IMG/VR virus record: IMGVR_UViG_3300022200_000019
Span: 124,001 to 188,000 of that record
Strand: one strand, 5' to 3'
DNA length: 64,000 nucleotides
Made by a program: the position numbers and the translations under genes. Shown in pieces: positions 22,492-59,168 of this stretch (the first letter of the stretch is position 1; each line of letters starts with the position of its first letter). The notes under the pieces are model-generated. The model was not told the origin of the DNA. It did not search any database and worked only from the letters and a program-made list of their open reading frames with translations.

Positions 22492-22902
22492 ATGAGTACT
22501 CTAGTAACACATAAAATCACAGGATTGCGTGCAATCAAGGATCATGTTCTGGTAACAGACATGAATTTTCACGAAAGATTTACTGAAGGCGGTATCATTA
22601 TTCCTGGTGACAACGGAACCACTGCTGGAATCAGACCTCGCTGGGCGATGGTGGTAGCTGTGGGTCCAGAACAACATGATGTCAAAGTTGGTGAATTTAT
22701 TCTGGTGGATCATGGTCGTTGGACTCGAGGAGTCGCTGTGGAGATGGAGGGGAATCCGGCGGTCGTCAGGCGTGTTGATGCCAAGGATATCTTGCTTTCC
22801 AGCGATGAACCACACACAGATGATACTTTTAGCAGTGCGCAACAAGCACGTTTAGACCGCACTCGCACTGAAGGATCCATGCATAACTCGCATAACTGGT
22901 AA
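22492..22902 (+). CDS. groES: GroES/Cpn10 co-chaperonin
   Basis: LRAIKDHVLV...TEGGIIIP...VVAVGP...VKVGEFIL...DILL; C-terminal extension. Confidence 0.9.
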   Translation: MSTLVTHKITGLRAIKDHVLVTDMNFHERFTEGGIIIPGDNGTTAGIRPRWAMVVAVGPEQHDVKVGEFILVDHGRWTRGVAVEMEGNPAVVRRVDAKDILLSSDEPHTDDTFSSAQQARLDRTRTEGSMHNSHNW

Positions 22903-24895: not shown

Positions 24896-25486
24896 ATGAA
24901 ACACAAAAGAATTTTGGTTGACGCTGATGGTGTTTTATTAGATTGGATGTATGCTTTTGATCAATGGATGATCCGTCATGGATTTCAAGTAAAAGATCCA
25001 AACGGATATAAAGTAGACGAGCGTTTTTACATTGAGCATGATAAAGGCAAGATGTATGCCAAGATGTTTAATGAAAGTGCGTGGATTCGCAAACTTCCAC
25101 CACACAAAGATGCTATTCACTATGTAAAGAAATTACATCAAGAACACGGTTATGTATTCCACGTAATTAGTTCGCTTAGTGATGATGAATATTCTCAGCA
25201 CCTGCGTACTAAGAACTTGCGTGAATTGTTTGGTGATACTGTGTTTGAAAAGTATGTATATTTGGACACAGGTGCAGACAAGGACAATGCGTTATTGCCG
25301 TACAAGGACTCTGGTTGTTATTGGGTAGAAGATAAGCCAGAAAACAGCGAATTAGGCTATAATATGGGGCTAACTCCACTACTTATGGAGCATGACCATA
25401 ACGCTGATCACGTTAGTGATAACGTGAAGCGTGTACAAAACTGGCGCGAAGTTTACGAAATTATTACCGAGAACGACACGTATTAA
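24896..25486 (+). CDS. HAD-family 5'(3')-deoxyribonucleotidase
   Basis: LVDADGVLLDW, WVEDKPEN. Confidence 0.85.
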   Translation: MKHKRILVDADGVLLDWMYAFDQWMIRHGFQVKDPNGYKVDERFYIEHDKGKMYAKMFNESAWIRKLPPHKDAIHYVKKLHQEHGYVFHVISSLSDDEYSQHLRTKNLRELFGDTVFEKYVYLDTGADKDNALLPYKDSGCYWVEDKPENSELGYNMGLTPLLMEHDHNADHVSDNVKRVQNWREVYEIITENDTY

Positions 25487-26468
25487 GGCATATATAGGGT
25501 TTGCCTGACATTATATCAGGTAAATCCCACGACTTCTGCAATGTTGTAAACCATTCAACACATTCGCTTAGAGGATATTCCAGTGCATTGTTATTTTTAA
25601 TCATTGGTTTAATTTGCGAGTTGCCAGGTTGGTGCATAGTTTCCGGGTAAAATCCCGTAAAACAACATGGATATATAGAACCGTCGGCTGCTAGATAAAT
25701 TTCTTGGTTTTGCATAGATATACAGTTTAATCTCGACGATTCGTCTATGTCTATTGACATTTTTATCGATGGATCAAACCAAGATAAATGATTGTTCAAT
25801 AAATCAGTAACTTTAGGTATGCCGCCAGGCCATCCATTAGTTCCTATCCAATATTCAAACTCTCCTTTTCTAGAATACACAGGGGTTTGGTTTCTTCCTT
25901 GGTCCCACAGTGTGAAATCTGTAAACCCAAGATCTTTTGCTAATGCCTTGCATTCGTTGATCTGATGTTTGTTATGCATAAATGGTATAAATTTCCAAAC
26001 AGCATTTCCGTTATTGTTAATAACAGATTTCGCGTTAGCAATAACTTTATTCCAATTCGTGTCTATTCTATAGGTGCTATGGGTATCTTCTAACCCATCC
26101 AATGCAAATAATATAGTGATGCGTCTATTTGCTAATTGTGCCCACCATTCTGGAGTATTAGCACTACCGTTAGTTTCGATTTGTATTTGCGAAGTGCTGT
26201 TAGTTAGAAAGTAATCAACTATTTTTAGCGCATCCTTGGCGTTAGAAAAGTCGCCAAGGTTACCATTAAAGTTAACATGCCTGATTTGCTTTAAAAAATC
26301 AATAGAAAATATTTTCTGTATATCTTCTAATAAAAGTTCTGTTATCGGGTACCCAGAATTATAAGAATATCCGCGATAATTTCTCATGCACATTGGGCAC
26401 CTAGCATTGCATCTAGTGGTTAACTCAATGTGCAGAGAACGTATACTGTTGATATCTAGCATCAACAT
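25464..26468 (-). CDS. Radical SAM protein with SPASM/Twitch domain
   Basis: CNARCPMC, FNGNLGD, IETNGS, ADGSIYPCC, C-terminal CxxxC; probable true start ATG 26462. Confidence 0.9.
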   Translation of the reverse strand: MLMLDINSIRSLHIELTTRCNARCPMCMRNYRGYSYNSGYPITELLLEDIQKIFSIDFLKQIRHVNFNGNLGDFSNAKDALKIVDYFLTNSTSQIQIETNGSANTPEWWAQLANRRITILFALDGLEDTHSTYRIDTNWNKVIANAKSVINNNGNAVWKFIPFMHNKHQINECKALAKDLGFTDFTLWDQGRNQTPVYSRKGEFEYWIGTNGWPGGIPKVTDLLNNHLSWFDPSIKMSIDIDESSRLNCISMQNQEIYLAADGSIYPCCFTGFYPETMHQPGNSQIKPMIKNNNALEYPLSECVEWFTTLQKSWDLPDIMSGKPYICLNTCRSR

Positions 26469-26477
26469 ATTTACATA

Positions 26478-27188
26478 TTAATTCTGGTATAAATTTAAAA
26501 CTGTGTCAATAATTCTGTGTCGTTGAATGTCCTTGGTCGATAATTTACAAACAGTGATGCCAGATGTCTGTTCTTGAAGTCTAGCACAAAGATCAATAAG
26601 ACCATTTTCAGACTTACGGCGATCTGTTTGTTCTACGTCACCTGTTACAACAACCTTACTACCTTCACCAATACGTGTTAGTAGCATTTTCATTTGTCCA
26701 GGAGTGGCGTTTTGCATTTCATCTCCGATAATCCAAGCGTTTTTGAATGTGCGACCTCTCATAAATGCTAGTGGGGCAACTTCCACAATTTGTTCTTCTA
26801 ACATTCTTGCGATCTCTTGAGGCGTGTAATATTCACGTAATACGTCTAGTAATGGACGAGTCCAAGGTGCCATTTTTTCCTCAAGGGTACCTGGTAAGAA
26901 GCCATGCTGCTCATCTTCTACGCCTACTGCTGGTCTTGTTAGTACAATACGTTCGCAACGCCCCATTCTAAAACAACGGATTGCCGCTTGCATTGCTAGA
27001 TATGTTTTGCCTGTACCTGCTGGGCCATAAGCAATAACAATGTCAGTGCTTGGATCAAGTAATCCTACAATATAGTTCTCTTGATTAAGTGATTTAGGAA
27101 TTAACTCTGTTTGTCTTAGCTGTGTTTTTAATGCTGAATTAAAGTTAATAGTATTTTCATCTTTCTTTAAACGTTTGTTTCTAGCCAT
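26478..27188 (-). CDS. phoH: PhoH-family ATPase
   Basis: GPAGTGKT, LTRP, GFLPG, FMRGRTF, DEMQN, GD..Q; TAAATA (-) at 27212-27217. Confidence 0.95.
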   Translation of the reverse strand: MARNKRLKKDENTINFNSALKTQLRQTELIPKSLNQENYIVGLLDPSTDIVIAYGPAGTGKTYLAMQAAIRCFRMGRCERIVLTRPAVGVEDEQHGFLPGTLEEKMAPWTRPLLDVLREYYTPQEIARMLEEQIVEVAPLAFMRGRTFKNAWIIGDEMQNATPGQMKMLLTRIGEGSKVVVTGDVEQTDRRKSENGLIDLCARLQEQTSGITVCKLSTKDIQRHRIIDTVLNLYQN

Positions 27189-27348: not shown

Positions 27349-27948
27349 ATGAACTTACCCAAACGTTTATTCTTTACAGGCGTACCAGGTTCTCGGTGGA
27401 GCGGCATTGCGCAGGTGCTAGAAGCACTACCAGGATTTAATACCACAGATCGCACACCAGAACGAACATACGAACACCATGCATACACAGGGCATGTGGG
27501 TGCATATTTTGGGCGTGGCATGGAATTCCCAGCTGAGCTGGATTTAGATACAATTGATAGTGCATGGACCGATCCAGCAGCTGGTACACAGATTGTTAAA
27601 AGTCATGACTGGGCGTATAAACTCAATGAAATACGAGCTGTTGCTAAAGAAAACGGAGATTGGATAATGCTTGTTTACCGTCCCGATTTAGCGAGTCAAG
27701 CATGGTGGCACGAGGCCGGTGGATTCCAAATTAAATATCCAAACTACGGTGTATACCGAGACCATGCAGGAATGCTTGCAGAGATTGTAGCACAAAACAA
27801 GGCTATACTAAAATTTGGCCGGGACGTTCTTGCTCGTTGGGATTATTTTGATGCGTCTTGGATTGCTGCAAAGTTTGGCATTCCGATTAATGATATTCCA
27901 GACATAACACCCTGGGATGACATACTCGTATCGGTGATAAAAATATGA
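27349..27948 (+). CDS. Hypothetical protein with P-loop-like N-terminus
   Basis: FFTGVPGSRWSG, VKSH; sulfotransferase-like fold is a guess. Confidence 0.65.
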   Translation: MNLPKRLFFTGVPGSRWSGIAQVLEALPGFNTTDRTPERTYEHHAYTGHVGAYFGRGMEFPAELDLDTIDSAWTDPAAGTQIVKSHDWAYKLNEIRAVAKENGDWIMLVYRPDLASQAWWHEAGGFQIKYPNYGVYRDHAGMLAEIVAQNKAILKFGRDVLARWDYFDASWIAAKFGIPINDIPDITPWDDILVSVIKI

Positions 27949-29195
27949 AAAATATATTAATAGTTGGAGATAGCTTTGCGGCCGACTGGACAGTAAAATA
28001 TAAAGATCATTATTTAGGATGGCCAAATTTGCTAGCAACTGACTTTAACGTAACTAATTTGGCGCAAGCCGGATGCGGGGAATATAAAATTTGGTTGCAA
28101 TTAACAAGTATTGATATTAAAGATTATGACTTCATTATTGTTAGTCATACTAGTCCATCTAGAATATATGTTAAAAACCATCCAATACACAACACTGATA
28201 CATTGCACAAGAACAGCGATTTAATTTACAATGATATTGTTAATCATTCAAAAAAACACAAAGAATTAAATGTTATAGTTAAATTTTTTGAAGAATATTT
28301 TGATTTGGATCAATCTGAATTTGTGCATAAATTAATACAACAACAAATTATTGACTATATAAAAGAAAAAACAGATGCGACAATTATAGAATTGTCGCAT
28401 ATCAAAGGAAATATTATACCTAATGCACGAGACACAATACAAGCTGAATTTTTATATCATGAAAAGCGGGCTGGGTTAATTAACCATTATACGCCCGACG
28501 ACAACAAAAAAGTATTTAATATACTAAAAAGCATAATTAATGAGCCGATATTACGTAATATCTCAGCTTTCAAATTTTCATTTCGTAAATCTGCATTTGA
28601 AGGATCTGATGACAAGTTAATATTGTATGAATATAACTCTCGTGGATTTCGAGATGCAGAATGGCCAAAATCAATCAACGAACTTAAAAAATGTATATGG
28701 TGTTTTGGCGATAGCCAAACAGTCGGTGTCGGTGATGCCTATGAAAATACCTGGCCTAAATTGTTAGAAAAAAAAATTAATAAACGTTGTATTAACGTTA
28801 GCATGGTTGATGCTAGCAACGATTGGATTTTCGATAGAGTTAAAATGATCATTGATGTTATAAAACCAAAATTTATTGTAATACAATGGTCTTTTCTGCA
28901 TCGGTATGAAGAAAATGCCGAGCAAAAACACTTTTGTGCCAATGAAATACTCGAGGATGATCTACGTTTAATTGACAAATTTGAAAAACAATATGACATT
29001 ATTGAACAACTAGCAAAGAAGAATAATGTTAAAATTATACATTCGTCGGTTCCGAACGATATATTAAATAACTGTCTTGAAATAATTGTAGAAGACTTTG
29101 CTCGCGATAGTTGTCACTATGGCGTTAAAACAGCAAATACATACACAGACAATGTTATTAAAAAAATAAAAGAATATGAACAGAAAGATTTTTAA
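27945..29195 (+). CDS. Tandem SGNH/GDSL-like hydrolase domains
   Basis: IVGDSFA...NLAQAGCG and CFGDSQT...NVSMVDAS; AT-rich. Confidence 0.75.
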   Translation: MKNILIVGDSFAADWTVKYKDHYLGWPNLLATDFNVTNLAQAGCGEYKIWLQLTSIDIKDYDFIIVSHTSPSRIYVKNHPIHNTDTLHKNSDLIYNDIVNHSKKHKELNVIVKFFEEYFDLDQSEFVHKLIQQQIIDYIKEKTDATIIELSHIKGNIIPNARDTIQAEFLYHEKRAGLINHYTPDDNKKVFNILKSIINEPILRNISAFKFSFRKSAFEGSDDKLILYEYNSRGFRDAEWPKSINELKKCIWCFGDSQTVGVGDAYENTWPKLLEKKINKRCINVSMVDASNDWIFDRVKMIIDVIKPKFIVIQWSFLHRYEENAEQKHFCANEILEDDLRLIDKFEKQYDIIEQLAKKNNVKIIHSSVPNDILNNCLEIIVEDFARDSCHYGVKTANTYTDNVIKKIKEYEQKDF

Positions 29196-29883
29196 TAAAC
29201 TCTTAGAAATAGTTAAGACAAGTCCGCAACTGCTGCTTGATAACCATTTATTAGGACAGGCCATTGCTGGGGAATTCAACGTTAAATTGGATGTTGTTAA
29301 CATCGACATTATTAAATTGGTTAACCAAATTGAAGAAGCTGTATTAGAACAATACTTCTCAAGGACATGGCAGCCCGAAACTAAAAAGTACAAGTATAGC
29401 GGACTAGCTATCATTGATCAAGTAAACTCGCTGAATCCAGATGCAGTACTTGACGCTGGCTGTGGATATAACGAGTTTAAAGGGAAGATTCAAAATTTAA
29501 CAGGCATCGATCCGTATAATGATCGTGCTGACATTAACGCACATATTTTAGACTACAAAACTGATGTAGAATACGATGTTGTTATTTGTTTAGGTAGTAT
29601 CAACTTCGGCACAGCTGATAAGATTTTTCAAGAAGTGCAGAAAGTGGTTAAATTAACTAAACCAGGCGGCTTAATTATCTTTCGCGTAAATCCTGGTATT
29701 CAACACGTTGCTAGAGAAAGTAAATGGATTGATTTTTTTGAGTGGGACATACCGTTCATTTTGAACGTAGCATATGCATTAAATTGTTCGGTAAAAGAAT
29801 TACACACAGATACATCACAAGATAAAAATCAGACATTGCTCAATGGCGAACGTTTATATTTTGTACTAGAAAAACAGCACTAA
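29176..29883 (+). CDS. Class I SAM-dependent methyltransferase
   Basis: VLDAGCGYN, GIDP, YDVVICLGSINF, LTKPGG. Confidence 0.85.
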   Translation: MNRKIFNKLLEIVKTSPQLLLDNHLLGQAIAGEFNVKLDVVNIDIIKLVNQIEEAVLEQYFSRTWQPETKKYKYSGLAIIDQVNSLNPDAVLDAGCGYNEFKGKIQNLTGIDPYNDRADINAHILDYKTDVEYDVVICLGSINFGTADKIFQEVQKVVKLTKPGGLIIFRVNPGIQHVARESKWIDFFEWDIPFILNVAYALNCSVKELHTDTSQDKNQTLLNGERLYFVLEKQH

Positions 29884-29976
29884 ATACCTCAAAACAACGA
29901 GTGTTGTTTGTTTCTTTGAATAAAAATTGCTGATAGCGATTGCTCTATGTATTAACATATGTCATAATAGGAAATC

Positions 29977-31434
29977 ATGTCACCTGATCATATCCTTTGG
30001 TTAATAGCTGGTATTATTTACGGACTGGTAGTAGGTATTATTCCTGTTGCTGGCGCAACAACCGGCTTGATTACAGTATTTTCATTTATTGGTATCTTTC
30101 AATACGGCGATCCTTATGCCGGGGTAGTATTCACTACAGCGTTAGTCGCAGCAAGTGCCATTGGCGATTCGTTCGCCAGCGTAGTAATGAATATCCCAGG
30201 TGCCAATGGTAGTGCCGCTACAATGATTGATGGATTTCCACTAGCACGTAAAGGTAAAGGAGCATATGCTCTATCCTCTGCAATTACTACGAGCACAATT
30301 AACGGCTTATTATGGGGAGTAATAGTATTTTATATGCTGCCATATTACGGAAGTCTAATGATGATACTAGGAGTTCCGGAAATATTTGGGTTAATGATAT
30401 TGGCATTAACGTGCATTGTATTCCTAAACAATCAGTATTGGGTGCGTGGTATAATTGCTATTGCATTGGGTATATTCTTAGGCTTAGTGGGAACAGACCC
30501 AGATACAAATGCAGCACGTTGGACAGGTGGCTGGTTCTATTTAGAAGATGGCATTCAAATAATGGCGCTACTATCTGGACTGTTAGCATTTCCTGAACTA
30601 ATTGAAGGATTACGCAATCATGGTAAACCAACCCCGCTTACCTCAAGAACACAATGGGGGCAAGTATGGGATGGTATTAAGGACAGTTGGCGCTATCGCT
30701 GGTTAGGCTTTAGAGGCGGTGTAGTTGGTGCTATTGTAGGCGCACTTCCTGGTTTAGGCGGCAATATTGCTGACTGGATGGCTTACGCACAAACAACAGC
30801 TACTTGTAAAAATGAAAAAATTCCGTTTGGTCAAGGAAATATTAAAGGTGTTATTGGTTGTGAGGGTGCCAACAATGCACATAAAGCAACCGCATATTTG
30901 CCGACTGTTTTGTTTGGTATTCCCGGTGCTCCGTTTGCCGCCGTAGTACTGGGACTGTTTTCATATCTCGGTTTTGAACTAGGTTCTATTAGCCTATTAG
31001 ATGACAAACAATTTTTTGAAAGTCTTACTGCCGGTTATATGTGGGCATTGGTACTCACTTTCCCTGTTGCATTATTAACTATACGTTGGTTAACAATGAT
31101 GACTCAATTACCGTTTAAGTATTTCTTTTGGCCTATTCTAGCAACTATTGTTTGGGCAAGCGTACAATACACAGGTGGGTGGGAAGATTATGCTGTATTA
31201 GTTATTTTTACGATATTAGGTTTATTCTTACGCAAATACAAGTTTAGTCGTCCGGCTCTTGTTATTGGCTTTATTTTATCCGACAAAATCGAAGCACTAT
31301 ATAAACAAGTGAGTGTTCTTTATACGCCAGAACAGTTGATCTCTCGTCCAGGATTTGTTATAATACTCGTGTTAACTGTGATTGCACTAGTATATGGACT
31401 GTTCTTTCACAAAAACAAAATTGAATTCACTTAA
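29977..31434 (+). CDS. Tripartite tricarboxylate transporter permease (TctA-like)
   Basis: NIPGANGSAATMIDGFPLA, LGLVGTDP, GNIKGVIGCEGANNA, LFGIPG; many TM helices. Confidence 0.9.
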   Translation: MSPDHILWLIAGIIYGLVVGIIPVAGATTGLITVFSFIGIFQYGDPYAGVVFTTALVAASAIGDSFASVVMNIPGANGSAATMIDGFPLARKGKGAYALSSAITTSTINGLLWGVIVFYMLPYYGSLMMILGVPEIFGLMILALTCIVFLNNQYWVRGIIAIALGIFLGLVGTDPDTNAARWTGGWFYLEDGIQIMALLSGLLAFPELIEGLRNHGKPTPLTSRTQWGQVWDGIKDSWRYRWLGFRGGVVGAIVGALPGLGGNIADWMAYAQTTATCKNEKIPFGQGNIKGVIGCEGANNAHKATAYLPTVLFGIPGAPFAAVVLGLFSYLGFELGSISLLDDKQFFESLTAGYMWALVLTFPVALLTIRWLTMMTQLPFKYFFWPILATIVWASVQYTGGWEDYAVLVIFTILGLFLRKYKFSRPALVIGFILSDKIEALYKQVSVLYTPEQLISRPGFVIILVLTVIALVYGLFFHKNKIEFT

Positions 31435-31443
31435 GGAGAAACT

Positions 31444-32613
31444 ATGAAAAAGTGGTTGGCCGCAATGGCTATGTTTGTCGCGTTACCTGCGAGCGCAACA
31501 TATACAATGATTATTCCGCAGGAAGCAGGCGGCGGTACTAGTGTATGGGCTAGTATTATTGCTAAACATCTCGAAAAGCATCTAGGTGAAGAGATTGTAT
31601 TACAGCACATTCCGGGTGCTCGCGATATTCCAGCATTTAACAAATTTCACAATGAACTACAGAACGATGACAAAACTATTATGGTAAGTCATGGTGGCAA
31701 TGCTGAAAGTTACCTCATTGAGGAAGTTGATTACAACTACAAGGAATATGAGCCTATTGGCGGTATGAATCTGTCAATTGTAACTGCTGGTCGCACAGGC
31801 ACTGATCCAACCAAGGATCCAATCCGCTTTAGTTCTGGTTCAGGAAATAACCCGGATGTAATGGCATTTACATTGCTTGCGTGCGGTGAGTTGCCTACAA
31901 TTGATGATTATGTTGCGTGTTTTAAAGATAAAGTTACATTTGTTAAGGGCATGAAATCTGGTGATCGTCGTCTTGCATTTATGCGTGGTGAACTAAATGC
32001 TACTCGCGAATCAACCGCTGCGTTTATTAAGCACGTCCAGCCATTGATTGATAAAGGCGAAGCAGAACTTTGGTTCAGTCACGGTGTACTTGATCTTGAA
32101 ACTGGCTTAGTTATGCCCGACGACAACTATTCCGTTGGTAGTTTTGATCAATACTATTTCCAGAAGTACAGTAAAAACCCAAGTGGTCCGTTGTACGATG
32201 CATACATCCTTGTAAAGCAGTATCGCGATGCACTACAGAAAGCACTATGGATGCGTAAAGGTAACCCAAATGCGCCAGCAGTTAAGGCTGCACTTGTAGC
32301 AATGCTTGCTGATCCAGAAGCACAGGCTGCTATTGAAAAGAAAGCAGGTAAGTATGGCTGGAATGTTGGCCCAGATTTGCTCAAAGCTGTAGACATTCTA
32401 AGTAACTTAACCAAGCGTCAAGCACTACAGGATCTTGTTCAATTCCAAGCTGAGGCACTTGGTGTTAAGGCTGTGTACAAAGCAGACATCACTGTGGATG
32501 CCAACGCTGCTGAACGTATGGTGAACAATACCTCACGCAGATTAGACCAAGCAGAAGAATCCTCTCTTAGTGCAACTGATCGTGCAATTAAATGGGTTAA
32601 AGACTTGTTCTAA
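31444..32613 (+). CDS. Periplasmic solute-binding protein (TctC/Bug-like)
   Basis: Signal peptide, IIPQEAGGGTSVW, IPG motif; adjacent to tctA-like gene. Confidence 0.7.
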   Translation: MKKWLAAMAMFVALPASATYTMIIPQEAGGGTSVWASIIAKHLEKHLGEEIVLQHIPGARDIPAFNKFHNELQNDDKTIMVSHGGNAESYLIEEVDYNYKEYEPIGGMNLSIVTAGRTGTDPTKDPIRFSSGSGNNPDVMAFTLLACGELPTIDDYVACFKDKVTFVKGMKSGDRRLAFMRGELNATRESTAAFIKHVQPLIDKGEAELWFSHGVLDLETGLVMPDDNYSVGSFDQYYFQKYSKNPSGPLYDAYILVKQYRDALQKALWMRKGNPNAPAVKAALVAMLADPEAQAAIEKKAGKYGWNVGPDLLKAVDILSNLTKRQALQDLVQFQAEALGVKAVYKADITVDANAAERMVNNTSRRLDQAEESSLSATDRAIKWVKDLF

Positions 32614-32970
32614 ATGGAATTGCTACTAACAAACGCAATTTATGTATCATATCGTTTGTTAGTTAGCGGGCCAATAGTTCGTACATTAAACAGGTATCTT
32701 ACGTATTACTTGGCTGTGTTTGTAATGGCACAGTTAAGTTTTGCGTATGATACCTTCGTCTTTGGATACTATTTTAATGCTCAGGAATTACCCCACATAT
32801 TAGATTACTTGTATTCTGATTTATTGTACACGTTACGAGTTATTGCTGCTTGGTGGGTAATTAAGCAATTATGGAATTGGATTGGCAACTATTGGATAGC
32901 GGTATTCTTAGGTGCTGAATTAACTTTTGTAACAGACTATTTCATTTTTAAAGATTTATTTGTAGGCTAA
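32614..32970 (+). CDS. Small multi-TM protein (possible TctB analogue)
   Basis: 118 aa, mostly hydrophobic; follows the binding protein. Confidence 0.6.
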   Translation: MELLLTNAIYVSYRLLVSGPIVRTLNRYLTYYLAVFVMAQLSFAYDTFVFGYYFNAQELPHILDYLYSDLLYTLRVIAAWWVIKQLWNWIGNYWIAVFLGAELTFVTDYFIFKDLFVG

Positions 32971-33104
32971 ATACATTTGGTATCGCAAGATACTATCCAT
33001 TTTGTGTTTGAATTATTTACAACAACGAGTGTTGTTGGTCTTTAGAGTTAAAGTCTTTTAAATAAGACAAACATTCACATTTTAAACATAAAGAGGATAT
33101 TCAA

Positions 33105-33788
33105 ATGTCATTTAACGCAAAAGCCTACGTGGCACAAGTTAAGGCGGATAATGCAGAACTATTTGCTGCTAGCCGTGAAAACGCAAAAAACTACTTCACT
33201 AGCAACCCTTCAAAAGAAGAATTAGTAGATCACTTCGTTGGTCGTATGGTTAATGAGCGTATGAACATGGTTGAAATTTCAAACCGTGTTGCTTCTATGC
33301 CAGCCGATACTAGCCCAGAAGAATTAGAAATGCTATCAAAGCAAGCCTTTGACGAAGCAGTTCACTTCAAGCTAGTTAAAGAAGTTATCGAACACATTGC
33401 CGGTGGTGAAATCAATGTTGCTGAAAAGATTGAATCGGCAGCAGGCGCAGAAGTTGCAGAAGGTAACTACGCTAAGGGTGCTACCCTACTAGCTAAGTAC
33501 GAAGCATCTACTGATCCAGTTTCACTAGCACTATATCAGCTAATTGCTGAAGGCCGTGCTGAGCAAGTTTGGGACGAAATGGCTAACTGCATCGAAGATA
33601 CATACGTATCTAGCCGTTATGCAAAGATCGCTCGTGACGAAGGTTTCCACAGCAACATCGGTGCTTGGAAGCTAGAAAAAATGCTAGAAGCTAACCCAGC
33701 TCTAGTTGCCCGTGTTGAAGAATTAGCACCACAAATGCGTGCTGACCTAATGCACATCAGCAACGAGAATACTGCTCTAGCAGCATAA
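33105..33788 (+). CDS. Ferritin-like di-iron protein
   Basis: Two ExxH motifs (DEAVH, DEGFH) plus NERMN, IAEGR; strongly biased codons. Confidence 0.75.
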   Translation: MSFNAKAYVAQVKADNAELFAASRENAKNYFTSNPSKEELVDHFVGRMVNERMNMVEISNRVASMPADTSPEELEMLSKQAFDEAVHFKLVKEVIEHIAGGEINVAEKIESAAGAEVAEGNYAKGATLLAKYEASTDPVSLALYQLIAEGRAEQVWDEMANCIEDTYVSSRYAKIARDEGFHSNIGAWKLEKMLEANPALVARVEELAPQMRADLMHISNENTALAA

Positions 33789-34327
33789 TGAATATTGGAC
33801 TCACTCAACGAGTCTTAGTTCATAACCAACAAGCGTATGACTCAATAGATCAAGCGTGGTATCGCTACCTAGAGGGTCATACGCTTTCTTTTATTCCTAA
33901 TAGAACAGATCAAGACTTTAAGCAATTAGCAGACACACTAGACTGTCTTATAATTACCGGCGGCGACGATAGTCCACTGCGACGTATAACCGAATTAAAA
34001 ATAGCAACAGAAATGATGAAACAGCAAAAACCTATATTAGGCGTTTGTCATGGAGCATTTTTGTTACAAGATGTGTTAGGCGGAAAAATCAAATCTGTCA
34101 ATGGCCATTATGATACAGAGCATACAGTATATTATAACAATCAAGAATTTACAGTTAACAGTTACCATACATTGAGCATTGAATCAGCACATGGAAAAAC
34201 ACTAGTTGTCGATTCCAATAATAATGCCGAAGCATGGATAGATGGCAATATTGCTGGTATTGTATGGCATCCTGAACGTATGGAACAACCTTGGCTACCA
34301 AATGAAATTTTTAAATTAATATTTTAA
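33788..34327 (+). CDS. Class I glutamine amidotransferase / PuuD-like (peptidase C26)
   Basis: LIITGG, GVCHG, VNSYH, WHPE. Confidence 0.9.
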   Translation: MNIGLTQRVLVHNQQAYDSIDQAWYRYLEGHTLSFIPNRTDQDFKQLADTLDCLIITGGDDSPLRRITELKIATEMMKQQKPILGVCHGAFLLQDVLGGKIKSVNGHYDTEHTVYYNNQEFTVNSYHTLSIESAHGKTLVVDSNNNAEAWIDGNIAGIVWHPERMEQPWLPNEIFKLIF

Positions 34328-34336
34328 CATCCCGTC

Positions 34337-34365
34337 TTGACGCATGATATATACTAATGTATAAT
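34337..34365 (+). promoter_or_regulatory. Sigma70-type promoter of amt
   Basis: TTGACG-17 bp-TATAAT. Confidence 0.85.
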
Positions 34366-34431: not shown

Positions 34432-35586
34432 ATGGAATTAGGCTATGCCTTAAACACCTTCTACTTCCTCATGTCAGCGGTGCTGGTTATGTGGATGGCA
34501 GCAGGTTTCACTATGTTGGAAGCAGGTAGTGTTCGAGTAAAGAATGTTACTGAAATCCTTGTTAAGAATGTTTCGCTTTATGCAGTAGCATCTCTTACAT
34601 ATCTTTTCTTAGGTTATGAACTAATGTACGGTTGGAGCCAGCCTGAAGATCACGCCATGATGAGTGATTTCTTCTTCCAGGTTGTGTTTGTAGCAACCGC
34701 AATGTCGGTTGTATCAGGTGCAGTTGCTGAACGAAAGAAACTTTGGTCTTTCTTGGTCTTTGCAGCAGTTTTCACCGCAGTCATTTATCCAATCCAAGGT
34801 TCTTGGTCTTGGGGCGGCGGCTGGTTGTCTGAAGCAGGATTTTTTGACTTTGCCGGTTCAGGTATTGTACACATGGCAGGTGCAGCAGCAGCATTAGCAG
34901 CAGTATTGCTAATTGGTCCACGTGCCGGTAAGTACGTTGATGGCAAGCCAGTAGCAATTCATGGATCTAACAGTGGTCAAGTAGCACTGGGTATGTTGAT
35001 TCTTTGGATGGGTTGGTTTGGGTTCAACGGTGGTTCTCAGTTGTCTATCATTGGTAACGAAAACGCAGATGCAGTTGCTCAAATCTTTGTAAACACAAAT
35101 ACAGCGGCAGCAGCAGGTTTGATTGTTGCTATGTTGTTGTCTAAGTTGTGGACTGGTAAGACTGCTCTTAACGCAACAGTAAATGGTGCATTGGCAGGTT
35201 TGGTTGTTATTACTGCTGACCCACTTACACCTTCTGCTGAAATGGCAGCACTATACGGTGGACTTGGTGGTTTGATTGTAGTGCCAGCAATGTCTCTGCT
35301 TGAAAAGTGGGGTATTGATGATCCAGTGGGTGCTATCTCGGTTCATGGTGTCGCAGGTATTCTAGGTCTGCTACTTGTTCCTGTACTTAACGCCGATGCT
35401 ACTCTAATGGCACAGTTGATCGGTACTGGCGCAATCTTTGGATTCGTATTTGTTGCTTCATTGATTGTATGGACAGTTTTGAAGTACACAATTGGCATTC
35501 GTGTCGGCGAAGAAGAAGAGCTTGCTGGTTCAGATATGTGGGAAGGCACAGGCGCTGCTTATCCTGACTTTATGAATAACAAGTAA
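34432..35586 (+). CDS. amt: Ammonium transporter
   Basis: GFTMLEAG, GAVAER, DFAGSGIVH, WFGFNGGS, DDPVGAISVHG (both His present). Confidence 0.97.
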   Translation: MELGYALNTFYFLMSAVLVMWMAAGFTMLEAGSVRVKNVTEILVKNVSLYAVASLTYLFLGYELMYGWSQPEDHAMMSDFFFQVVFVATAMSVVSGAVAERKKLWSFLVFAAVFTAVIYPIQGSWSWGGGWLSEAGFFDFAGSGIVHMAGAAAALAAVLLIGPRAGKYVDGKPVAIHGSNSGQVALGMLILWMGWFGFNGGSQLSIIGNENADAVAQIFVNTNTAAAAGLIVAMLLSKLWTGKTALNATVNGALAGLVVITADPLTPSAEMAALYGGLGGLIVVPAMSLLEKWGIDDPVGAISVHGVAGILGLLLVPVLNADATLMAQLIGTGAIFGFVFVASLIVWTVLKYTIGIRVGEEEELAGSDMWEGTGAAYPDFMNNK

Positions 35587-35607: not shown

Positions 35608-35632
35608 AAAGCAGCCTTCGGGCTGCTTTTTT
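35608..35632 (+). terminator. Rho-independent terminator
   Basis: AAAGCAGCC-TTCG-GGCTGCTTT followed by a T run. Confidence 0.9.
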
Positions 35633-35729: not shown

Positions 35730-36686
35730 ATGAAAAGACTAATTGCGTTTTTTGCCGCACTGGCAATTAGCACAAGTGCTTTCGCAGGGGCGAAAGTAGA
35801 CACACAGTTACCAAACTATCATAAAGTTTCAGGTGTTAGTGGTAATTTAAACTCGGTGGGCTCAGATACATTAGCAAATTTAATGACTATGTGGGCTGAG
35901 GAATTTCGTAAAATATATCCTAATGTTAACATTGGTATTCAAGCAGCGGGATCAAGCACTGCCCCGCCAGCACTAACTGAAGGAACTTCAAATGTTGGTC
36001 CAATGAGTCGTAAGATGAAGGATAAAGAACTACAAGCATTTGAGGCAAAGTATGGATATAAACCAACTGCTATTCCTGTTGCTATTGATGCGTTAGCAGT
36101 ATTTGTTAACAAGGACAATCCTATTAAAGGATTAACGATTGCTGAAGTTGACGCAATCTTCTCAAGCACAAGAAAGTGCGGTGCTAAACAAGACGCAATT
36201 AAATGGGGCGATGTAGGGTTAACTGGCTCCTGGACAAATCGCACAATTCAATTGTATGGTCGTAATTCTGTATCTGGCACCTACGGCTACTTTAAGAAAA
36301 AAGCACTTTGTAAAGGGGATTACAAAAATGATGTAAATGAACAACCAGGTTCAGCATCTGTAGTACAAAGTGTCACAGGTAGTATAAATGGCATTGGTTA
36401 CTCAGGTATGGGTTACAAGACTTCTGGTGTAAAAACTGTTCCATTAAGCAAGAAAGGCGGTCCATACGTGGACGCAACACCTGAAAATGCATTAAATGGT
36501 TCATACCCACTGGCACGTTTTTTATACATTTATGTAAACAAGGCTCCTAATAAGCCGTTAGATCCAATGACATACGAATTTATTCGTATGGTTCTATCCA
36601 AGCAAGGACAAACAGTTGTAGTCAAAGATGGCTATGTTCCGTTACCTGCTGATATGGCTGAGAAATTATTGAAAACTGTTCAATGA
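35730..36686 (+). CDS. pstS: Phosphate ABC transporter substrate-binding protein
   Basis: Signal peptide; [48 protein letters not shown]. Confidence 0.95.
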
Positions 36687-36712: not shown

Positions 36713-36738
36713 AAAGCAGCCTTCGGGCTGCTTTTTTT
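36713..36738 (+). terminator. Rho-independent terminator identical to the one at 35608
   Basis: AAAGCAGCCTTCGGGCTGCTTTTTTT; T-tract overlaps TATAAATA (36738-36745). Confidence 0.9.
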
Positions 36739-37866: not shown

Positions 37867-38670
37867 GTGAAAAAATATAACAGATTAATTTCTTTTGGAG
37901 ATAGTTTTGTCTGGGGCAGTGAGTTATCAGATTGTTTGACCGCTTCTCCAAAAGAAATTGTGAATAATCCAGAAAAATTCCCCAACGAATTAAAATTCAT
38001 TCAAGATCGAAAAATTGGACCTTGTTCTGAAGTAAACATCAACGGCGAAATTAGCTCGTTATTTGCAGGATATAGTCTTAGTACTTGGCCTGCACTGTTA
38101 GCCACATACCTAAATCTAGAATATAGATGTGTGGCATATCCTGGAATTAGTAACCAAACTATTATTCGCAAATTAGTAAAATTTCTTCCAGAAATAAATT
38201 CTACAGATTTAGTTGTCATTGACTGGACTTTTATAGATAGATGGGACTATGTTGATATTAACGAACCCCGTATCGAATATCAATGGAAAACATTGCGTCC
38301 AACATCAGATAAAAAAACAAAAATTGAAAAATTTTATTTTGACGCAGTTCAAAGCGAACTCTGGAATAAATGGGAATCATTAAGAGCCATCATGCTGGTA
38401 GTACATTTGCTTAGATCGAGAGACATCGATTTTATCATGACCTCAGAAGATACACTGATACTTGATGAAAACTACCATACTCCTTCATATATAAGGAACG
38501 CACAAACTGAAATTAAAAATCATATAAACTGGTTCGAAGACAATGGGTTTTATCATTGGTCGATAAATCAAGGATTTCTTCGAGGTAAAGAAAATGATCA
38601 TCCATTAGAAGATGCACACCAAGCAGCATTTGAATACATAATAGAAAATCAATGGCATTTAGAATTCTAA
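37867..38670 (+). CDS. SGNH/GDSL-like hydrolase
   Basis: SFGDSFVWG, YPGISN, NDHP. Confidence 0.75.
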   Translation: MKKYNRLISFGDSFVWGSELSDCLTASPKEIVNNPEKFPNELKFIQDRKIGPCSEVNINGEISSLFAGYSLSTWPALLATYLNLEYRCVAYPGISNQTIIRKLVKFLPEINSTDLVVIDWTFIDRWDYVDINEPRIEYQWKTLRPTSDKKTKIEKFYFDAVQSELWNKWESLRAIMLVVHLLRSRDIDFIMTSEDTLILDENYHTPSYIRNAQTEIKNHINWFEDNGFYHWSINQGFLRGKENDHPLEDAHQAAFEYIIENQWHLEF

Positions 38671-39077
38671 TAATGGGCCTATCTGGTGCGGGCAAAACCA
38701 CACTGGCAAAAAAACTTGTTGACGGACTAAAAAAATATGAATTTGATGTGGCATGGTTTAACGCAGATGATGTGAGAGAATTAACAAACAACTGGGATTT
38801 TTCTGCAGAAGGACGAATTTTACAAGCGCATACACTAAAGCGCATGGCAGATGAGGCTCCCAATGATATCATAGTTGCTGATTTTATTGCTCCACTTGCG
38901 CAACAGCGTGCAATATTTAATCCCAACTTTATTATATGGGTCGATACCATTGGATCCAGTCAATACACAGACACCGACAGTGTTTTTGAAACACCAGCCT
39001 TTGTTAACTACTACATTTCTGATTGGGACGAACAACACGAAGCAAATATCTTACATTTACTTCTAGAAGATGAATAA
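38652..39077 (+). CDS. Adenylyl-sulfate kinase-like (CysC-type) P-loop protein
   Basis: ILIMGLSGAGKTTLA, NADDVR, FIAP, FETP. Confidence 0.75.
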   Translation: MAFRILIMGLSGAGKTTLAKKLVDGLKKYEFDVAWFNADDVRELTNNWDFSAEGRILQAHTLKRMADEAPNDIIVADFIAPLAQQRAIFNPNFIIWVDTIGSSQYTDTDSVFETPAFVNYYISDWDEQHEANILHLLLEDE

Positions 39078-39828
39078 TCCGTACCATATATTAGGCGTTT
39101 CTCCAAACGCATCACCAGAACAGATTAAAAAGGCTTTCAAGCAGCTAGCCATGAAGCATCATCCTGATCGCGGCGGCGACGAAGCAGAGTTTAAAAAAAT
39201 CAACGAAGCATATGCTATACTAAGCGATCCTGAACGCAAGCAACAGCACGACAATCCTGGATTTAATTTCAGACACACCGCAGGTGGAAACTTTCATGAT
39301 GTGTTTGATGAATTTTTCAGACAGCAAAGACAACAGCGCACATCAACTGTTAGATTATCGTTGTATATTGATTTAAAAACCGCAGCCACAGGCGGGGAAA
39401 AACTCGTAAGTTTACAAACTACTAACGGCCCACAAGCAGTGGAAATCGAAATTCCCGAAGGTATTAACGATGGCGATACTGTGCGTTATCCTCAGTTACT
39501 CAGGCACAGCGACTTACAAGTTACATTTCGCATACATCCAGATAAAACATGGCAGCGTCAGGGGAACAATCTAACACGCGAGCTTGAACTGGATTTCTGG
39601 GATTTTATTCTAGGCAGCAAAGTTGAAGTGGAAACCATCTACGGCGATCGCATCGCGTTAACTGTGCCACCAAAATCACATCCAGGAACACTGATGCGGA
39701 TTAAAACCAAAGGCATGCGTGGCAAATATGCAGGCCAGACTGGAGATATGTTTGTAAAACTTACTGCTAAACTCCCAGAAGATTTGCCAGAAGAGCTAAT
39801 TGATACCCTAAAAAGGTTGCGCCAATAA
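39070..39828 (+). CDS. DnaJ-class II (CbpA-like) co-chaperone
   Basis: J-domain with HPD; DnaJ C-terminal domain; no Zn finger. Confidence 0.9.
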   Translation: MNNPYHILGVSPNASPEQIKKAFKQLAMKHHPDRGGDEAEFKKINEAYAILSDPERKQQHDNPGFNFRHTAGGNFHDVFDEFFRQQRQQRTSTVRLSLYIDLKTAATGGEKLVSLQTTNGPQAVEIEIPEGINDGDTVRYPQLLRHSDLQVTFRIHPDKTWQRQGNNLTRELELDFWDFILGSKVEVETIYGDRIALTVPPKSHPGTLMRIKTKGMRGKYAGQTGDMFVKLTAKLPEDLPEELIDTLKRLRQ

Positions 39829-39836: not shown

Positions 39837-40190
39837 ATGTTAAAATTAGTCAAAACGCCAAAGAAAAAGAAGCCAACAGATTGTACATTTGAAAAGCCAG
39901 TTGACAATCAAAAAACAGCAGTTAAAATGTTAATGTGCTGTAACAGTAATAACAGAGAATATGTAATTGGCCCAGATGTAGGTTTAGATTTAAATGTATT
40001 GGTAACAAAAACAAAACCAAATTATTATTTCAATCCGGCTATAGTTGATAATGGTGTGCAATATCAAGATTACTTAGGTAACACAATGCACACAGATACA
40101 ATAACAGAAGCAATGCAAGAAGCATTAACAAGACTTGCAGGAACTAGAAGAACCAGGAAAAAAACGGATGCAAATCAATCCAGAAATTGA
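39837..40190 (+). CDS. Degenerate peptide deformylase-like protein
   Basis: VIGPDVGLDLNVLV...FNPAIV echoes PDF motif I; HExxH absent. Confidence 0.4.
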   Translation: MLKLVKTPKKKKPTDCTFEKPVDNQKTAVKMLMCCNSNNREYVIGPDVGLDLNVLVTKTKPNYYFNPAIVDNGVQYQDYLGNTMHTDTITEAMQEALTRLAGTRRTRKKTDANQSRN

Positions 40191-56509: not shown

Positions 56510-57835
56510 ATGCGAGCAAGAGATTTCATTCTACTAGAATACAAGCACGACGTTACGATGAGAAACTATGGTGAAAAGTTTCGCGATCGCATGCTTGGCG
56601 ATATGACCATTACTGCTAGTACTCAGAGTAAACTAGAAGATGCTAAAGCTAAAGGCATAGGTCCGTCCAGTGATACGTTCACTCCAGGCTATCTAAGAAG
56701 AATCGAACAATCAGATCCAACTCCAAATCGAGAATACACACAGTGGATGGTGCGTAGTTATATTAACCGTGTTGTTAATTATTACGAAGACGTATTATCT
56801 ACACTTGCGGGCTTTGCTGGTATGTTTAACGAGCTTAAAATACATCGTCGTTTACCAGAAAAATATCGCGACATTAATCAAATCAAAACTCGAGAAATCT
56901 TTCGTGATGCTTATCGAGCAGTTGCTGATCGATATGAAGAATTCCGCGACGAACAGCAAGAACAGAAACCACTAAGCAAAGGCCACGCACAAGAAGTCTA
57001 CAACGGACCAGAAGTGAGAATCATCCATCCTGTAGACCAAGCGGCTGCTTGTTACTATGGGCAAGGTACACAGTGGTGTACTGCTAGTACACGCAGCCAA
57101 AATTACTTTAATGATTACAACAACGAAGGTCCGTTATTAATACTAATTCCCAAGAAGCCAGCGCATGAAGGCGAGAAATATCAATTACATGCTGCTAGCG
57201 AACAAGTTATGGACGAGCATGACAGTTCTGTTCCAATGGGTCACGTAGTAAGTAGATTCCCCAATACCAATCTTGGAGAGATTCTAATTAAATTTGATCC
57301 TGAATGGAAAGACTTTGCAGAACTAATGCATCCAGATGATCTTAAACGAATTGTTCGTTTGTATAACCAAAGACTTGTAAACTTTAACAAATGGATCTTG
57401 GATCAATACACCCAAAACAGCTCAATGTCAAAACAGCAACAACAAGAACTAAAAGCTGCTGCGGAACGTGCTGGTTGGCCAAACGCTGGTACATTCACAT
57501 ACGATCAGTTTGCTGAATATCTACGTACTGGATCTATCCATTCTAAGGAACGTTTTATAAGAACACTAGTTGATCTATCTTATGATTTATTAATCCCGCA
57601 TTTAAGAAGCAATGACGCTCTTGAGCAGTTTGACAAGACTCCTAGAGATGTTTTAAATACTCAAGGAATGGTAGGATTAAGCAAAAGAAACTTTGTTCAA
57701 ACATGGACAGTATTATTAAATGACTGGAGAATTCGGTTTAGTGATGAAGATCCAGATTGGGCAACATATGTTGGGCCTACTAACAACAGCATGTATAATA
57801 ACGCAGTAGGGTATACCGATTGGAGTAGCCGATGA
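56510..57835 (+). CDS. CTS-leader paralogue 1 (DPTPN / YYGxGTxWCTA family)
   Basis: MRARDFILLE; shared core with three downstream genes. Confidence 0.85.
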   Translation: MRARDFILLEYKHDVTMRNYGEKFRDRMLGDMTITASTQSKLEDAKAKGIGPSSDTFTPGYLRRIEQSDPTPNREYTQWMVRSYINRVVNYYEDVLSTLAGFAGMFNELKIHRRLPEKYRDINQIKTREIFRDAYRAVADRYEEFRDEQQEQKPLSKGHAQEVYNGPEVRIIHPVDQAAACYYGQGTQWCTASTRSQNYFNDYNNEGPLLILIPKKPAHEGEKYQLHAASEQVMDEHDSSVPMGHVVSRFPNTNLGEILIKFDPEWKDFAELMHPDDLKRIVRLYNQRLVNFNKWILDQYTQNSSMSKQQQQELKAAAERAGWPNAGTFTYDQFAEYLRTGSIHSKERFIRTLVDLSYDLLIPHLRSNDALEQFDKTPRDVLNTQGMVGLSKRNFVQTWTVLLNDWRIRFSDEDPDWATYVGPTNNSMYNNAVGYTDWSSR

Positions 57836-59166: not shown

Positions 59167-59168
59167 AT

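What the first reader, a model, noticed from the sequence alone, without database searches (positions are those of the whole stretch)
27349..34327. Phage-encoded tripartite transporter embedded in an enzyme cluster
Seen: P-loop-like protein, double SGNH protein, methyltransferase, TctA-like permease, TctC-like binding protein, small TM protein, ferritin-like di-iron enzyme (two ExxH, highly biased codons) and PuuD-like glutamine amidotransferase, all co-oriented with late promoters. Established: TctABC are secondary carboxylate importers; PuuD hydrolyses gamma-glutamyl amides; ferritin-like di-iron enzymes perform oxidations. Inference: an apparently complete importer coupled to an uncharacterised catabolic or biosynthetic pathway, which is unusual for a phage. 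The substrate is unknown.
Basis: partly seen in the sequence, partly recalled or inferred. Interest (0 to 1): 0.7.

Follow-up and report, generated by a model that had tools for sequence, protein, structure and literature searches.

The report
Jumbo-phage two-part TctA/TctC-like importer
A large uncultured aquatic phage, and hundreds of its relatives, carry a well-conserved membrane permease and matching binding protein of the bacterial TTT nutrient-uptake family, so these phages probably equip infected cells with an extra importer for a still unknown small organic acid.

Summary
The eight co-oriented ORFs are real. 29977-31434 is a full-length TctA permease. 31444-32613 is a secreted, divergent TctC/Bug-type binding protein that Pfam misses, but a PDB profile search and an AlphaFold/Foldseek comparison both recover it.

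The pair is adjacent in every related phage locus with enough flank (42/42). About 326 IMG/VR contigs carry it. It is under strong purifying selection. Its nearest cellular homologues are the same binding-protein type next to a TctA-TctB fusion.

The system is not a complete tripartite transporter. No TctB is detectable, and the 118-aa membrane ORF is rare in relatives and unlike TctB.

The "enzyme cluster" is not one pathway:
- A SAM methyltransferase (39/42) and the "P-loop" protein, really sulfotransferase-like (29/42), travel with the transporter.
- The di-iron protein and the GATase are accessory (about 10/42).
- The tandem SGNH protein is nearly unique to this phage.
- Amt and PstS next door occur only in this phage's closest kin.

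T4-type late promoters are not present.

Best reading: a binding-protein-dependent secondary importer of a small organic anion, part of a phage nutrient-uptake island. The substrate is unknown. I class it as a new variant of a known kind, of moderate to high interest.

The parts
27349..27948 (+). Motifs GxPGS[KR]WS and KSH, and a near-invariant Arg.
   Evidence: Alignment A4 invariants. Atlas neighbours carry Sulfotransfer_1/3, by features and by structure. 4 of 18 members weakly hit PF13469. Within 3 kb of TctA in 29 of 42 relatives. dN/dS 0.05-0.06.
27945..29195 (+). 416-aa protein with two GDSL/SGNH-like halves
   Evidence: Weak Lipase_GDSL_2 hits in each half. The halves align weakly to each other. 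Present in 1 of 42 relatives.
29176..29883 (+). 235-aa class I SAM-dependent methyltransferase-like protein (DxGCGY motif)
   Evidence: Profile A5 against the PDB: CFA synthase 2e-4, TehB. Within 3 kb of TctA in 39 of 42 relatives, on either side and in either orientation.
29894..29907 (+). Hairpin ACAACGAGTGTTGT, first copy, just upstream of TctA
   Evidence: Only two copies in 64 kb, 0.05 expected.
29977..31434 (+). TctA permease, 485 aa, without a TctB domain
   Evidence: PF01970 E 8.5e-89, full length. 55 of 69 cellular-conserved columns kept. dN/dS 0.03-0.05. 326 IMG/VR contigs encode relatives.
31444..32613 (+). Secreted divergent TctC/Bug-type solute-binding protein, 389 aa. N-terminal signal peptide read by eye; C-terminal helix extension.
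   Evidence: The cellular homologue next to the nearest cellular TctA gives hhalign 99.7%, E 1.7e-26. Adjacent to TctA in 42 of 42 relatives.
32614..32970 (+). 118-aa membrane protein of unknown family. Not TctB by any test.
   Evidence: Near TctA in 3 of 42 relatives. dN/dS 0.10. Complex prediction gave no answer.
33022..33035 (+). Hairpin ACAACGAGTGTTGT, second copy, just after the 118-aa ORF
33105..33788 (+). 227-aa di-iron carboxylate protein (ferritin-like / haem-oxygenase-like superfamily), probably highly expressed
   Evidence: Nc 32.8 and CAI 0.77. It is the only gene of the region covered by a metatranscriptome contig. Present in 10-11 of 42 relatives.
33788..34327 (+). 179-aa class I glutamine amidotransferase / Peptidase C26-type hydrolase. 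Cys87 and His161-Pro-Glu163 read by eye.
   Evidence: Pfam GATase 1.7e-12, Peptidase_C26 3.1e-12. Best NCBIfam match is gamma-glutamyl-CDP-amidate hydrolase at 66 bits, far below its cut-off of 250. Present in 9-10 of 42 relatives.
34432..35586 (+). Ammonium transporter, marine subtype
   Evidence: PF00909 1.4e-87. TIGR03644 527 bits, above its cut-off of 514. Absent from the 42 relatives but present in the close relative L099.
35730..36686 (+). PstS-family phosphate-binding protein, bracketed by identical terminators at 35608-35629 and 36713-36734
   Evidence: TIGR02136 293 bits, above its cut-off. Terminators.
38652..39077 (+). 141-aa APS-kinase-like P-loop kinase, a possible maker of the PAPS-type donor
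   Evidence: PF01583 6.4e-10, above the Pfam cut-off but below the NCBIfam cut-offs. Homologues lie near TctA in about 11 loci.

Best explanation
The core of the finding is a two-gene, binding-protein-dependent secondary importer of the tripartite tricarboxylate transporter (TTT) family. It is carried as a conserved cassette by a widespread clade of aquatic jumbo phages related to PA5oct and Atu_ph07.

Proposed mechanism. After infection the phage makes a TctA permease in the host inner membrane and exports a TctC-like binding protein to the periplasm. The binding protein captures a small organic anion (a carboxylate or a related acid; substrate unknown) and hands it to TctA, which moves it in using the host's ion gradient. 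No phage TctB takes part. Either it is dispensable or the host's is borrowed.

In this particular phage the cassette sits in a nutrient-uptake island with an ammonium channel and a phosphate-binding protein.

The methyltransferase and the sulfotransferase-like protein that nearly always accompany the cassette probably act on the imported compound or a derivative of it. The di-iron protein, the GATase and the SGNH protein are variable add-ons, not obligatory steps.

Shown: gene identities, fold, conservation, synteny, purifying selection, cellular origin. Inferred: expression in the envelope, direction of transport, substrate class, coupling to the enzymes.
For: - TctA is full length and keeps all conserved charged and polar positions of cellular TctAs.
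- The binding protein matches TctC-family structures by profile and by fold, and has an N-terminal signal peptide (by eye).
- The pair is adjacent in 42 of 42 loci with at least 6 kb of flank and occurs in 326 IMG/VR contigs. Homologue counts in the protein search: 1236 for the binding protein.
- dN/dS is 0.03-0.13.
- The nearest cellular TctA (34% identity) is a TctA-TctB fusion. Next to it lies a full-length homologue of the phage binding protein. That binding-protein type is found in 14 of 201 sampled bacterial genomes.
- The flanking phage genes change between relatives while MT235-TctA-TctC stay together (39/42, against PhoH 13, DnaJ 12, ClpA 9).
- Amt and PstS, both above curated cut-offs, lie directly downstream.
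- GC content of the genes matches the genome.
Against: - No TctB is detectable, and whether TctA works without it is unknown.
- The binding protein is too divergent for the Pfam TctC model. An Asp that BugD carries in the first binding loop is Ser here (alignment), so the ligand may not be a classical carboxylate.
- There is no expression evidence for TctA or TctC. The one RNA run covers only the di-iron gene.
- No cultured phage carries the module and the host is unknown.
- Linkage of the MT and the sulfotransferase-like gene could partly reflect shared ancestry of the loci rather than function.
Confidence: 0.6

Rival explanations
1. Dedicated precursor import for a phage-specified tailoring pathway. 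The transporter brings in an organic acid that the phage's own enzymes convert into a sulfated and methylated (or phosphoramidate-type) product. The enzymes would be the methyltransferase, the sulfotransferase-like transferase, the APS-kinase-like kinase, the Cj1417-like amidohydrolase, and the oxygenases. The product would modify the virion, the DNA or the host envelope.
For: - MT235 and p199 stay next to TctA-TctC while the wider context changes.
- An APS-kinase-like gene lies 4 kb downstream, and near TctA in about 11 relatives. In L004 it is fused to a nucleotidyltransferase-like domain.
- The GATase's best named relative is the gamma-glutamyl-CDP-amidate hydrolase of the Campylobacter O-methyl phosphoramidate pathway.
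- From my own knowledge, that pathway also uses an APS-kinase homologue and methyltransferases.
- Relatives add cupin-like, Asp/Asn-hydroxylase-like and AMP-binding enzymes at the same place.
- One cellular homologue of the pair sits among glycosyltransferases and a methyltransferase.
Against: - All the enzyme assignments are weak and below curated cut-offs.
- The GATase, the kinase and the di-iron protein are each present in a minority of relatives.
- No glutamine kinase or clear cytidylyltransferase was looked for or found in this genome.
- A hairpin lies between the transporter genes and each flanking gene group.
Confidence: 0.2
2. The pair has been co-opted for a non-transport role, for example blocking or mimicking a host receptor or uptake system for superinfection exclusion, or envelope remodelling linked to lysis.
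For: - In several relatives, lysis-type genes lie a few kb downstream: GH19 lysozyme and weak Pfam hits to holin- and LysC-type families.
- TctB is missing.
- The binding protein of this phage and its closest kin carries an extra C-terminal helix (lengths).
Against: - The transport-relevant conserved positions of TctA are retained.
- The binding protein keeps the two-lobe TctC fold.
- The pair was inherited from a cellular transporter pair.
- dN/dS is very low in both genes.
Confidence: 0.07
3. The genes are host DNA misassembled into, or recently captured by, a phage contig and have no role in infection.
For: Related contigs were binned into MAGs of unrelated phyla. Public 'phage' records with ordinary TctA genes look like host fragments.
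Against: - Hundreds of independent viral contigs carry the same pair between phage genes: clamp loader, PhoH, DnaJ, ClpA, lysozyme.
- The record carries the capsid and terminase genes.
- GC content matches the genome.
- Selection is strongly purifying.
- Identity to the nearest cellular TctA is only 34%.
Confidence: 0.02

Closest known systems
Bacterial tripartite tricarboxylate transporters (TctABC; binding proteins BugD, BugE, Bug27, MatC, AdpC, TphC/TBP)
   Same: TctA permease domain over its full length. Periplasmic binding protein with the TctC two-lobe fold and the N-terminal P-x-x-x-G-G-x-T loop. Genes adjacent and co-oriented.
   Different: No TctB. The binding protein belongs to a sister subfamily that the Pfam TctC model does not detect. 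It is about 50 residues longer than solved TctCs. It has Ser where BugD has Asp in the first binding loop. Gene order is A then C. It is carried by a virus.
Cellular 'long TctA' systems (TctA-TctB fusions of 630-700 aa with an adjacent unannotated binding protein of about 358 aa, e.g. locus L094)
   Same: Closest cellular relatives of both phage proteins: TctA 34% identity; binding protein hhalign 99.7%. Same pairing of the two genes.
   Different: The cellular permease carries a C-terminal TctB-like extension that the phage protein lacks. In cells the binding-protein gene lies upstream, and the context is catabolic genes with GntR-type regulators.
Virus-encoded nutrient-uptake genes (cyanophage PstS; the ammonium transporter of an Ostreococcus virus; both from my own knowledge)
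   Same: A virus supplies uptake components to the infected cell. This phage itself also carries PstS and Amt next to the TTT pair.
   Different: Here a permease and its own binding protein are both supplied. They form a conserved hallmark of a whole jumbo-phage clade rather than a sporadic acquisition.
tctA domain hit on SUP05-associated viral contigs (eLife 2014, PMC4164917)
   Same: The only earlier mention I found of tctA on viral contigs. The authors state its role is unknown.
   Different: [quoted passage not shown] No binding protein, synteny or clade-wide conservation was described. Whether it is the same lineage was not tested.

Membership tests
TTT transporter (TctABC) | TctA large permease (PF01970) over its full length | tested here: met
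   E 8.5e-89, profile positions 1-423 of 423. 55 of 69 cellular-conserved columns retained.
TTT transporter (TctABC) | TctC-type periplasmic binding protein recognised by the family model (PF03401) | tested here: not met
   No Pfam, NCBIfam or PHROG hit for 31444-32613.
TTT transporter (TctABC) | Binding protein with TctC/Bug fold and remote sequence similarity | tested here: met
   Profile search: the top 7 PDB hits are all TctC family. Foldseek: the top 17 are all TctC family, TM by target 0.59-0.71.
TTT transporter (TctABC) | TctB small membrane subunit, separate or fused | tested here: not met
   TctA is 485 aa with no extension. The 118-aa ORF has no PF07331 hit, no similarity to the TctB-like tails of cellular fusions, and is present near TctA in 3 of 42 relatives.
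TTT transporter (TctABC) | Binding and uptake of a carboxylate | not testable with these tools
   Needs a ligand screen and uptake assays.
Class I glutamine amidotransferase / Peptidase C26 | Family model above cut-off, and a Cys-His-Glu triad | tested here: met
   GATase 47.9 bits (cut-off 22.8) and Peptidase_C26 47.2 bits (cut-off 20.5). GVC87HG and H161-P-E163 read.
gamma-glutamyl-CDP-amidate hydrolase (NF045546 equivalog) | Score above the equivalog cut-off | tested here: not met
   66.2 bits against a cut-off of 250. It is the best named relative only.
Ferritin-like di-iron carboxylate proteins | Four-helix core carrying E / ExxH / E / ExxH ligands | tested here: met
   E51, E84, H87, E149, E153, E179 and H182 are invariant in 20 sequences and lie on helices 37-64, 71-99, 138-162 and 166-196 of the model. 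Fold matches are weak, E about 1e-2 to 1e-3. No subfamily could be assigned.
PAPS-dependent sulfotransferases | Family model hit, and PAPS-binding loops | tested here: inconclusive
   The window protein has no Pfam hit. 4 of 18 relatives hit Sulfotransfer_3, best E 0.006. Atlas neighbours by features and structure are sulfotransferases. The GxPGS[KR]WS, KSH and Arg motifs were compared from memory only.
SGNH/GDSL hydrolases | Family model above cut-off; blocks I-V | tested here: inconclusive
   28.8 bits against a cut-off of 32.9 for the whole protein. Each half has E 0.01-0.03, covering block I only.
T4-type late transcription units | TATAAATA late promoter upstream of the genes | tested here: not met
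   2 matches in 64 kb against 6 expected. None lies upstream of the eight genes.

The most novel reading that the evidence does not exclude
The TctA/TctC-like pair, the methyltransferase and the sulfotransferase-like transferase form one phage-specific pathway. In subsets of the clade it is extended by an APS-kinase-like kinase, a Cj1417-like amidohydrolase, and di-iron and cupin oxygenases. The pathway would import an organic acid and turn it into a sulfated, methylated or phosphoramidate-bearing product that the phage needs, for example to decorate the virion, its DNA or the host envelope. That would be a virus-encoded 'import and tailor' system with a TctB-independent TTT transporter.
Probability: 0.15. 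Interest if true: 0.85.

Novelty: new variant of a known kind. Interest (0 to 1): 0.6.

Why it matters
Viruses are known to carry single uptake components such as PstS. A permease together with its own binding protein, kept under strong selection across hundreds of jumbo-phage genomes from fresh, estuarine and marine waters, would mean that these phages routinely rewire what their hosts take up.

It also exposes a TctC-like binding-protein subfamily, present in bacteria too, that current domain models miss.

It offers a natural test of whether TctA can work without TctB.

The binding protein is small, secreted and confidently modelled, so the substrate question can be addressed directly.

Tried and rejected
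- TctB identity of the 118-aa ORF. Pfam at E up to 10, a PDB profile search, the Atlas, and hhalign against the TctB-like tails of two cellular fusions all gave nothing.
- My own by-eye guess that the 118-aa ORF is GtrA-like was not supported either.
- A three-chain complex prediction (TctA + binding protein + 118-aa protein) returned 'no answer'. It is not evidence either way.
- The megablast of the region against cultured phages found nothing.
- tblastn of TctA against phage records found only about 26-29% matches in records that look like host fragments.
- The sequence-profile search of the di-iron family against the PDB gave only chance-level hits.
- The profile of the 199-aa family against the PDB gave nothing.
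- The T4 late promoter and sigma-70 scans were at or below chance.
- Host assignment was not achieved. Related contigs sit in MAGs of five unrelated lineages, and the genome tools give no taxon names for the cellular homologues.
- 'Host contamination' was considered and rejected (see rival explanations).
- Literature searches found no description of the module beyond a tctA domain hit on SUP05 viral contigs.

Full report
**What the window is.** The window is bases 124001-188000 of a 212,917-bp linear IMG/VR virus record. CheckV estimates it as 61% complete. The record encodes a T4-type Gp23 major capsid protein (E 6.6e-99) and a large terminase. The nearest cultured relatives of the terminase are the jumbo phages PA5oct (55% identity), Phosso, Atu_ph07 and Vibrio phage 2.275.O. 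Near-identical sequence occurs in several runs labelled freshwater metagenome, with partial matches in estuary, lagoon and marine-sediment runs. So 'phage-encoded' holds.

**The ORFs.** Eight + strand ORFs lie at the stated coordinates.

*TctA (29977-31434).* It matches Pfam TctA over the whole profile (E 8.5e-89).

*Binding protein (31444-32613).*
- It has an N-terminal signal peptide by eye.
- It has no hit in Pfam, NCBIfam or PHROGs.
- The protein search returned 1236 homologues, and none of the 120 listed carries a Pfam domain.
- A profile of 22 homologues (A1) finds only TctC/Bug binding proteins at the top of a PDB sequence search: BugD 7.8e-5, BugE, MatC, Bug27, AdpC and others.
- An AlphaFold2 model (pLDDT 90.9, pTM 0.86) has TctC-family structures as its 17 best Foldseek matches, with E 7e-11 to 7e-8 and TM by target 0.59-0.71.
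- I conclude it is a divergent TctC-type binding protein.
- The first binding loop reads PQE(A/P)GGGTS where BugD has PFAAGGPTD. A second loop, AGSGNNPD, resembles the second TctC pincer. That comparison is from memory and was not tested.

*The 118-aa ORF (32614-32970).* It is a conserved membrane protein in the closest kin. It shows no similarity to TctB, to the TctB-like tails of cellular TctA-TctB fusions, or to anything named. A complex prediction gave no answer.

*The 'P-loop-like' protein (27349-27948).*
- The family has invariant GxPGSxWS (with K or R at the x position in most members) and an invariant His in a conserved KSH motif.
- Its Atlas neighbours are sulfotransferases, by sequence features and by structure.
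- 4 of 18 family members weakly hit Sulfotransfer_3.

*The remaining ORFs of the finding.*
- The 416-aa protein has two GDS-motif halves with weak GDSL hits.
- The 235-aa protein is a class I SAM-methyltransferase-like protein.
- The 179-aa protein is a class I GATase/Peptidase C26. Its best named relative is the gamma-glutamyl-CDP-amidate hydrolase, far below that model's cut-off.

*The 227-aa di-iron protein.*
- E51, E84xxH87, E149/E153 and E179xxH182 are invariant and lie on the four long helices of a confident model (pLDDT 88.6).
- Its structural neighbours are ferritin-like and haem-oxygenase-like di-iron proteins, with weak scores.
- No subfamily can be named.

An alignment-based scan found 326 IMG/VR contigs encoding a TctA relative, on contigs up to 383 kb. 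Across 87 fetched loci the binding-protein gene directly follows TctA wherever sequence is available. Among the 42 loci with at least 6 kb on both sides, genes within 3 kb of the pair are:

| Gene | Loci (of 42) |
|---|---|
| Binding protein | 42 |
| Methyltransferase | 39 |
| Sulfotransferase-like protein | 29 |
| Di-iron protein | 10 |
| GATase | 9 |
| APS-kinase-like gene | 5 |
| 118-aa ORF | 3 |
| SGNH protein | 1 |
| Amt, PstS | 0 |

- A cupin-like 235-aa family that is absent from this locus follows the pair in 25 of 42 loci.
- The surrounding phage genes are far less constant: PhoH 13, DnaJ 12, ClpA 9, clamp loader 9.
- The methyltransferase and the sulfotransferase-like gene change side and orientation yet stay adjacent.
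- I conclude that the unit that moves together is MT - (sulfotransferase-like) - TctA - TctC-like.
- In the window, the hairpin ACAACGAGTGTTGT occurs only twice in 64 kb. One copy lies just before TctA and the other just after the 118-aa ORF. I read them as terminator-like elements that may set the transporter genes apart as their own transcription unit.

**Function is maintained.**
- Against relatives of about 90% identity, dN/dS is 0.03-0.05 for TctA and 0.08-0.13 for the binding protein.
- It is 0.10 for the 118-aa ORF, 0.04 for the di-iron protein and about 0.05 for the sulfotransferase-like protein. Some dS values are near saturation.
- TctA keeps 55 of the 69 columns that are at least 80% conserved in 131 cellular TctAs. 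These include D85, E135, R181, E207, Y270, E296, N299/N300, D404 and E439.

**Origin.**
- An exhaustive search shows about ten phage-type TctA clusters (36-52% identity). There is then a drop to about 34% identity with mostly 630-700-aa proteins.
- These long forms are TctA-TctB fusions. One carries a weak Pfam TctB hit and has a classical TctC next to it.
- The best one (L094) has a 358-aa Pfam-less protein directly upstream. That protein is a full-length homologue of the phage binding protein (hhalign 99.7%, E 1.7e-26, 316 columns).
- The same binding-protein type occurs in 14 of 201 sampled genomes of that bacterium's class.
- The phage pair therefore descends from a cellular binding-protein plus TctA(B) system and lacks the TctB part.

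**How it most likely works.** The mechanism is given under the best explanation: a TctA permease in the inner membrane, an exported TctC-like binding protein in the periplasm, and ion-gradient-driven import of a small organic anion. That much follows from what is established for the TTT family, combined with the intact features shown here. The direction of transport, the substrate class and the independence from TctB are inferences. In this phage the cassette is followed by a marine-subtype ammonium transporter and a PstS-family protein, both above curated cut-offs, which fits a nutrient-uptake island. The steady company of a methyltransferase and a sulfotransferase-like protein suggests that the imported compound, or something made from it, is tailored. 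The APS-kinase-like gene 4 kb downstream points the same way. I rate this 'import and tailor' reading at 0.15-0.2.

**The di-iron gene stands apart.**
- It has the strongest codon bias of all 161 ORFs of at least 150 aa (Nc 32.8, against 35.1 for the capsid gene).
- Its codon usage matches the putative structural genes (CAI 0.77, against 0.42-0.59 for its neighbours).
- In the one marine metatranscriptome run that shares sequence with the region, a single 659-nt contig at 97% identity covers exactly this gene and nothing else. DNA carry-over cannot be excluded.
- It is probably very highly expressed, and it need not serve the transporter.

**What is not supported.**
- A complete tripartite system: there is no TctB.
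- A single eight-gene pathway.
- T4-type late promoters. TATAAATA is under-represented and absent upstream of these genes, and sigma-70-like sites are at chance.

**Comparison with what is known.** The literature held here mentions tctA on viral contigs only as a domain hit on SUP05-associated contigs, with unknown role. No paper describing the pair, its binding protein or its clade-wide conservation was found. No cultured phage record carries a close homologue.

**Verdict.** This is a real, conserved, probably functional, TctB-less TTT-type importer of a jumbo-phage clade, with a binding-protein subfamily that current models miss. It is a new variant of a known kind. Interest 0.6.

Noticed in passing
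window 35608-35629 and 36713-36734 (flanking PstS, 35730-36686): Two identical 22-nt terminator hairpins (AAAGCAGCCTTCGGGCTGCTTT) bracket the PstS gene and occur nowhere else in the window. In the close relative L099, Amt is followed directly by the 186-aa gene with no PstS. PstS therefore looks like a recent cassette insertion.
   Followed up: partly
window 33105-33788: The di-iron gene has the strongest codon bias in the whole 213-kb record, stronger than the capsid gene. It is the only gene of the region covered by a contig of a marine metatranscriptome run. Its family has 2212 homologues in the protein search, more than the binding protein.
   Followed up: partly
window 38652-39077; L004 10962-11813: An APS-kinase-like P-loop kinase (GLSGAGKT; FNADDVR). 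In relative L004 it is fused to a weak nucleotidyltransferase-like domain, which hints at synthesis of a PAPS-type donor by the phage.
   Followed up: partly
window 34432-35586: An ammonium transporter of the 'marine subtype' (TIGR03644, above its cut-off), preceded by a near-consensus sigma-70-like promoter (TTGACG-17-TATAAT at 34337-34365). It is present in the closest relatives only.
   Followed up: partly
L028 14364-15071 and 24 other loci: A 235-aa family with a cupin / 2OG-oxygenase-like HxD...H pattern (by eye) follows the TctA-TctC pair in 25 of 42 relatives. It is missing at this locus. A weak homologue lies elsewhere in the record (about G000 112060-112383).
   Followed up: partly
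window 56510-61885: Four tandem ORFs of 438-477 aa that all hit the same PHROG of unknown function (phrog_28193). They appear to be a tandem paralogue array.
   Followed up: no
window 22492-22902, 39070-39828, 40135-42453: The phage carries its own chaperone set: a GroES-like Cpn10, a DnaJ and a ClpA-type AAA+ unfoldase. DnaJ-ClpA lie downstream of the module in many relatives.
   Followed up: no
window 24896-25486, 25464-26468 (-), 26478-27188 (-): An NT5C-like 5'-nucleotidase (weak hit), a radical SAM protein and PhoH lie just upstream of the module. Radical SAM genes recur near TctA in some relatives.
   Followed up: no
L064 7807-8487, L086 13122-14288, L076 5427-6047: In one sub-lineage of relatives the TctA-TctC pair is flanked by AMP-binding (adenylate-forming) enzyme genes and an Asp/Asn-beta-hydroxylase-like gene. 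These are further candidate carboxylate-processing partners.
   Followed up: no
L010-L014: Related phage contigs are binned into MAGs labelled Polynucleobacter, Weeksellaceae, Chitinophagales, Terrimicrobiaceae and 'marine bacterium B5-7'. This is most likely mis-binning, so those labels give no host.
   Followed up: no
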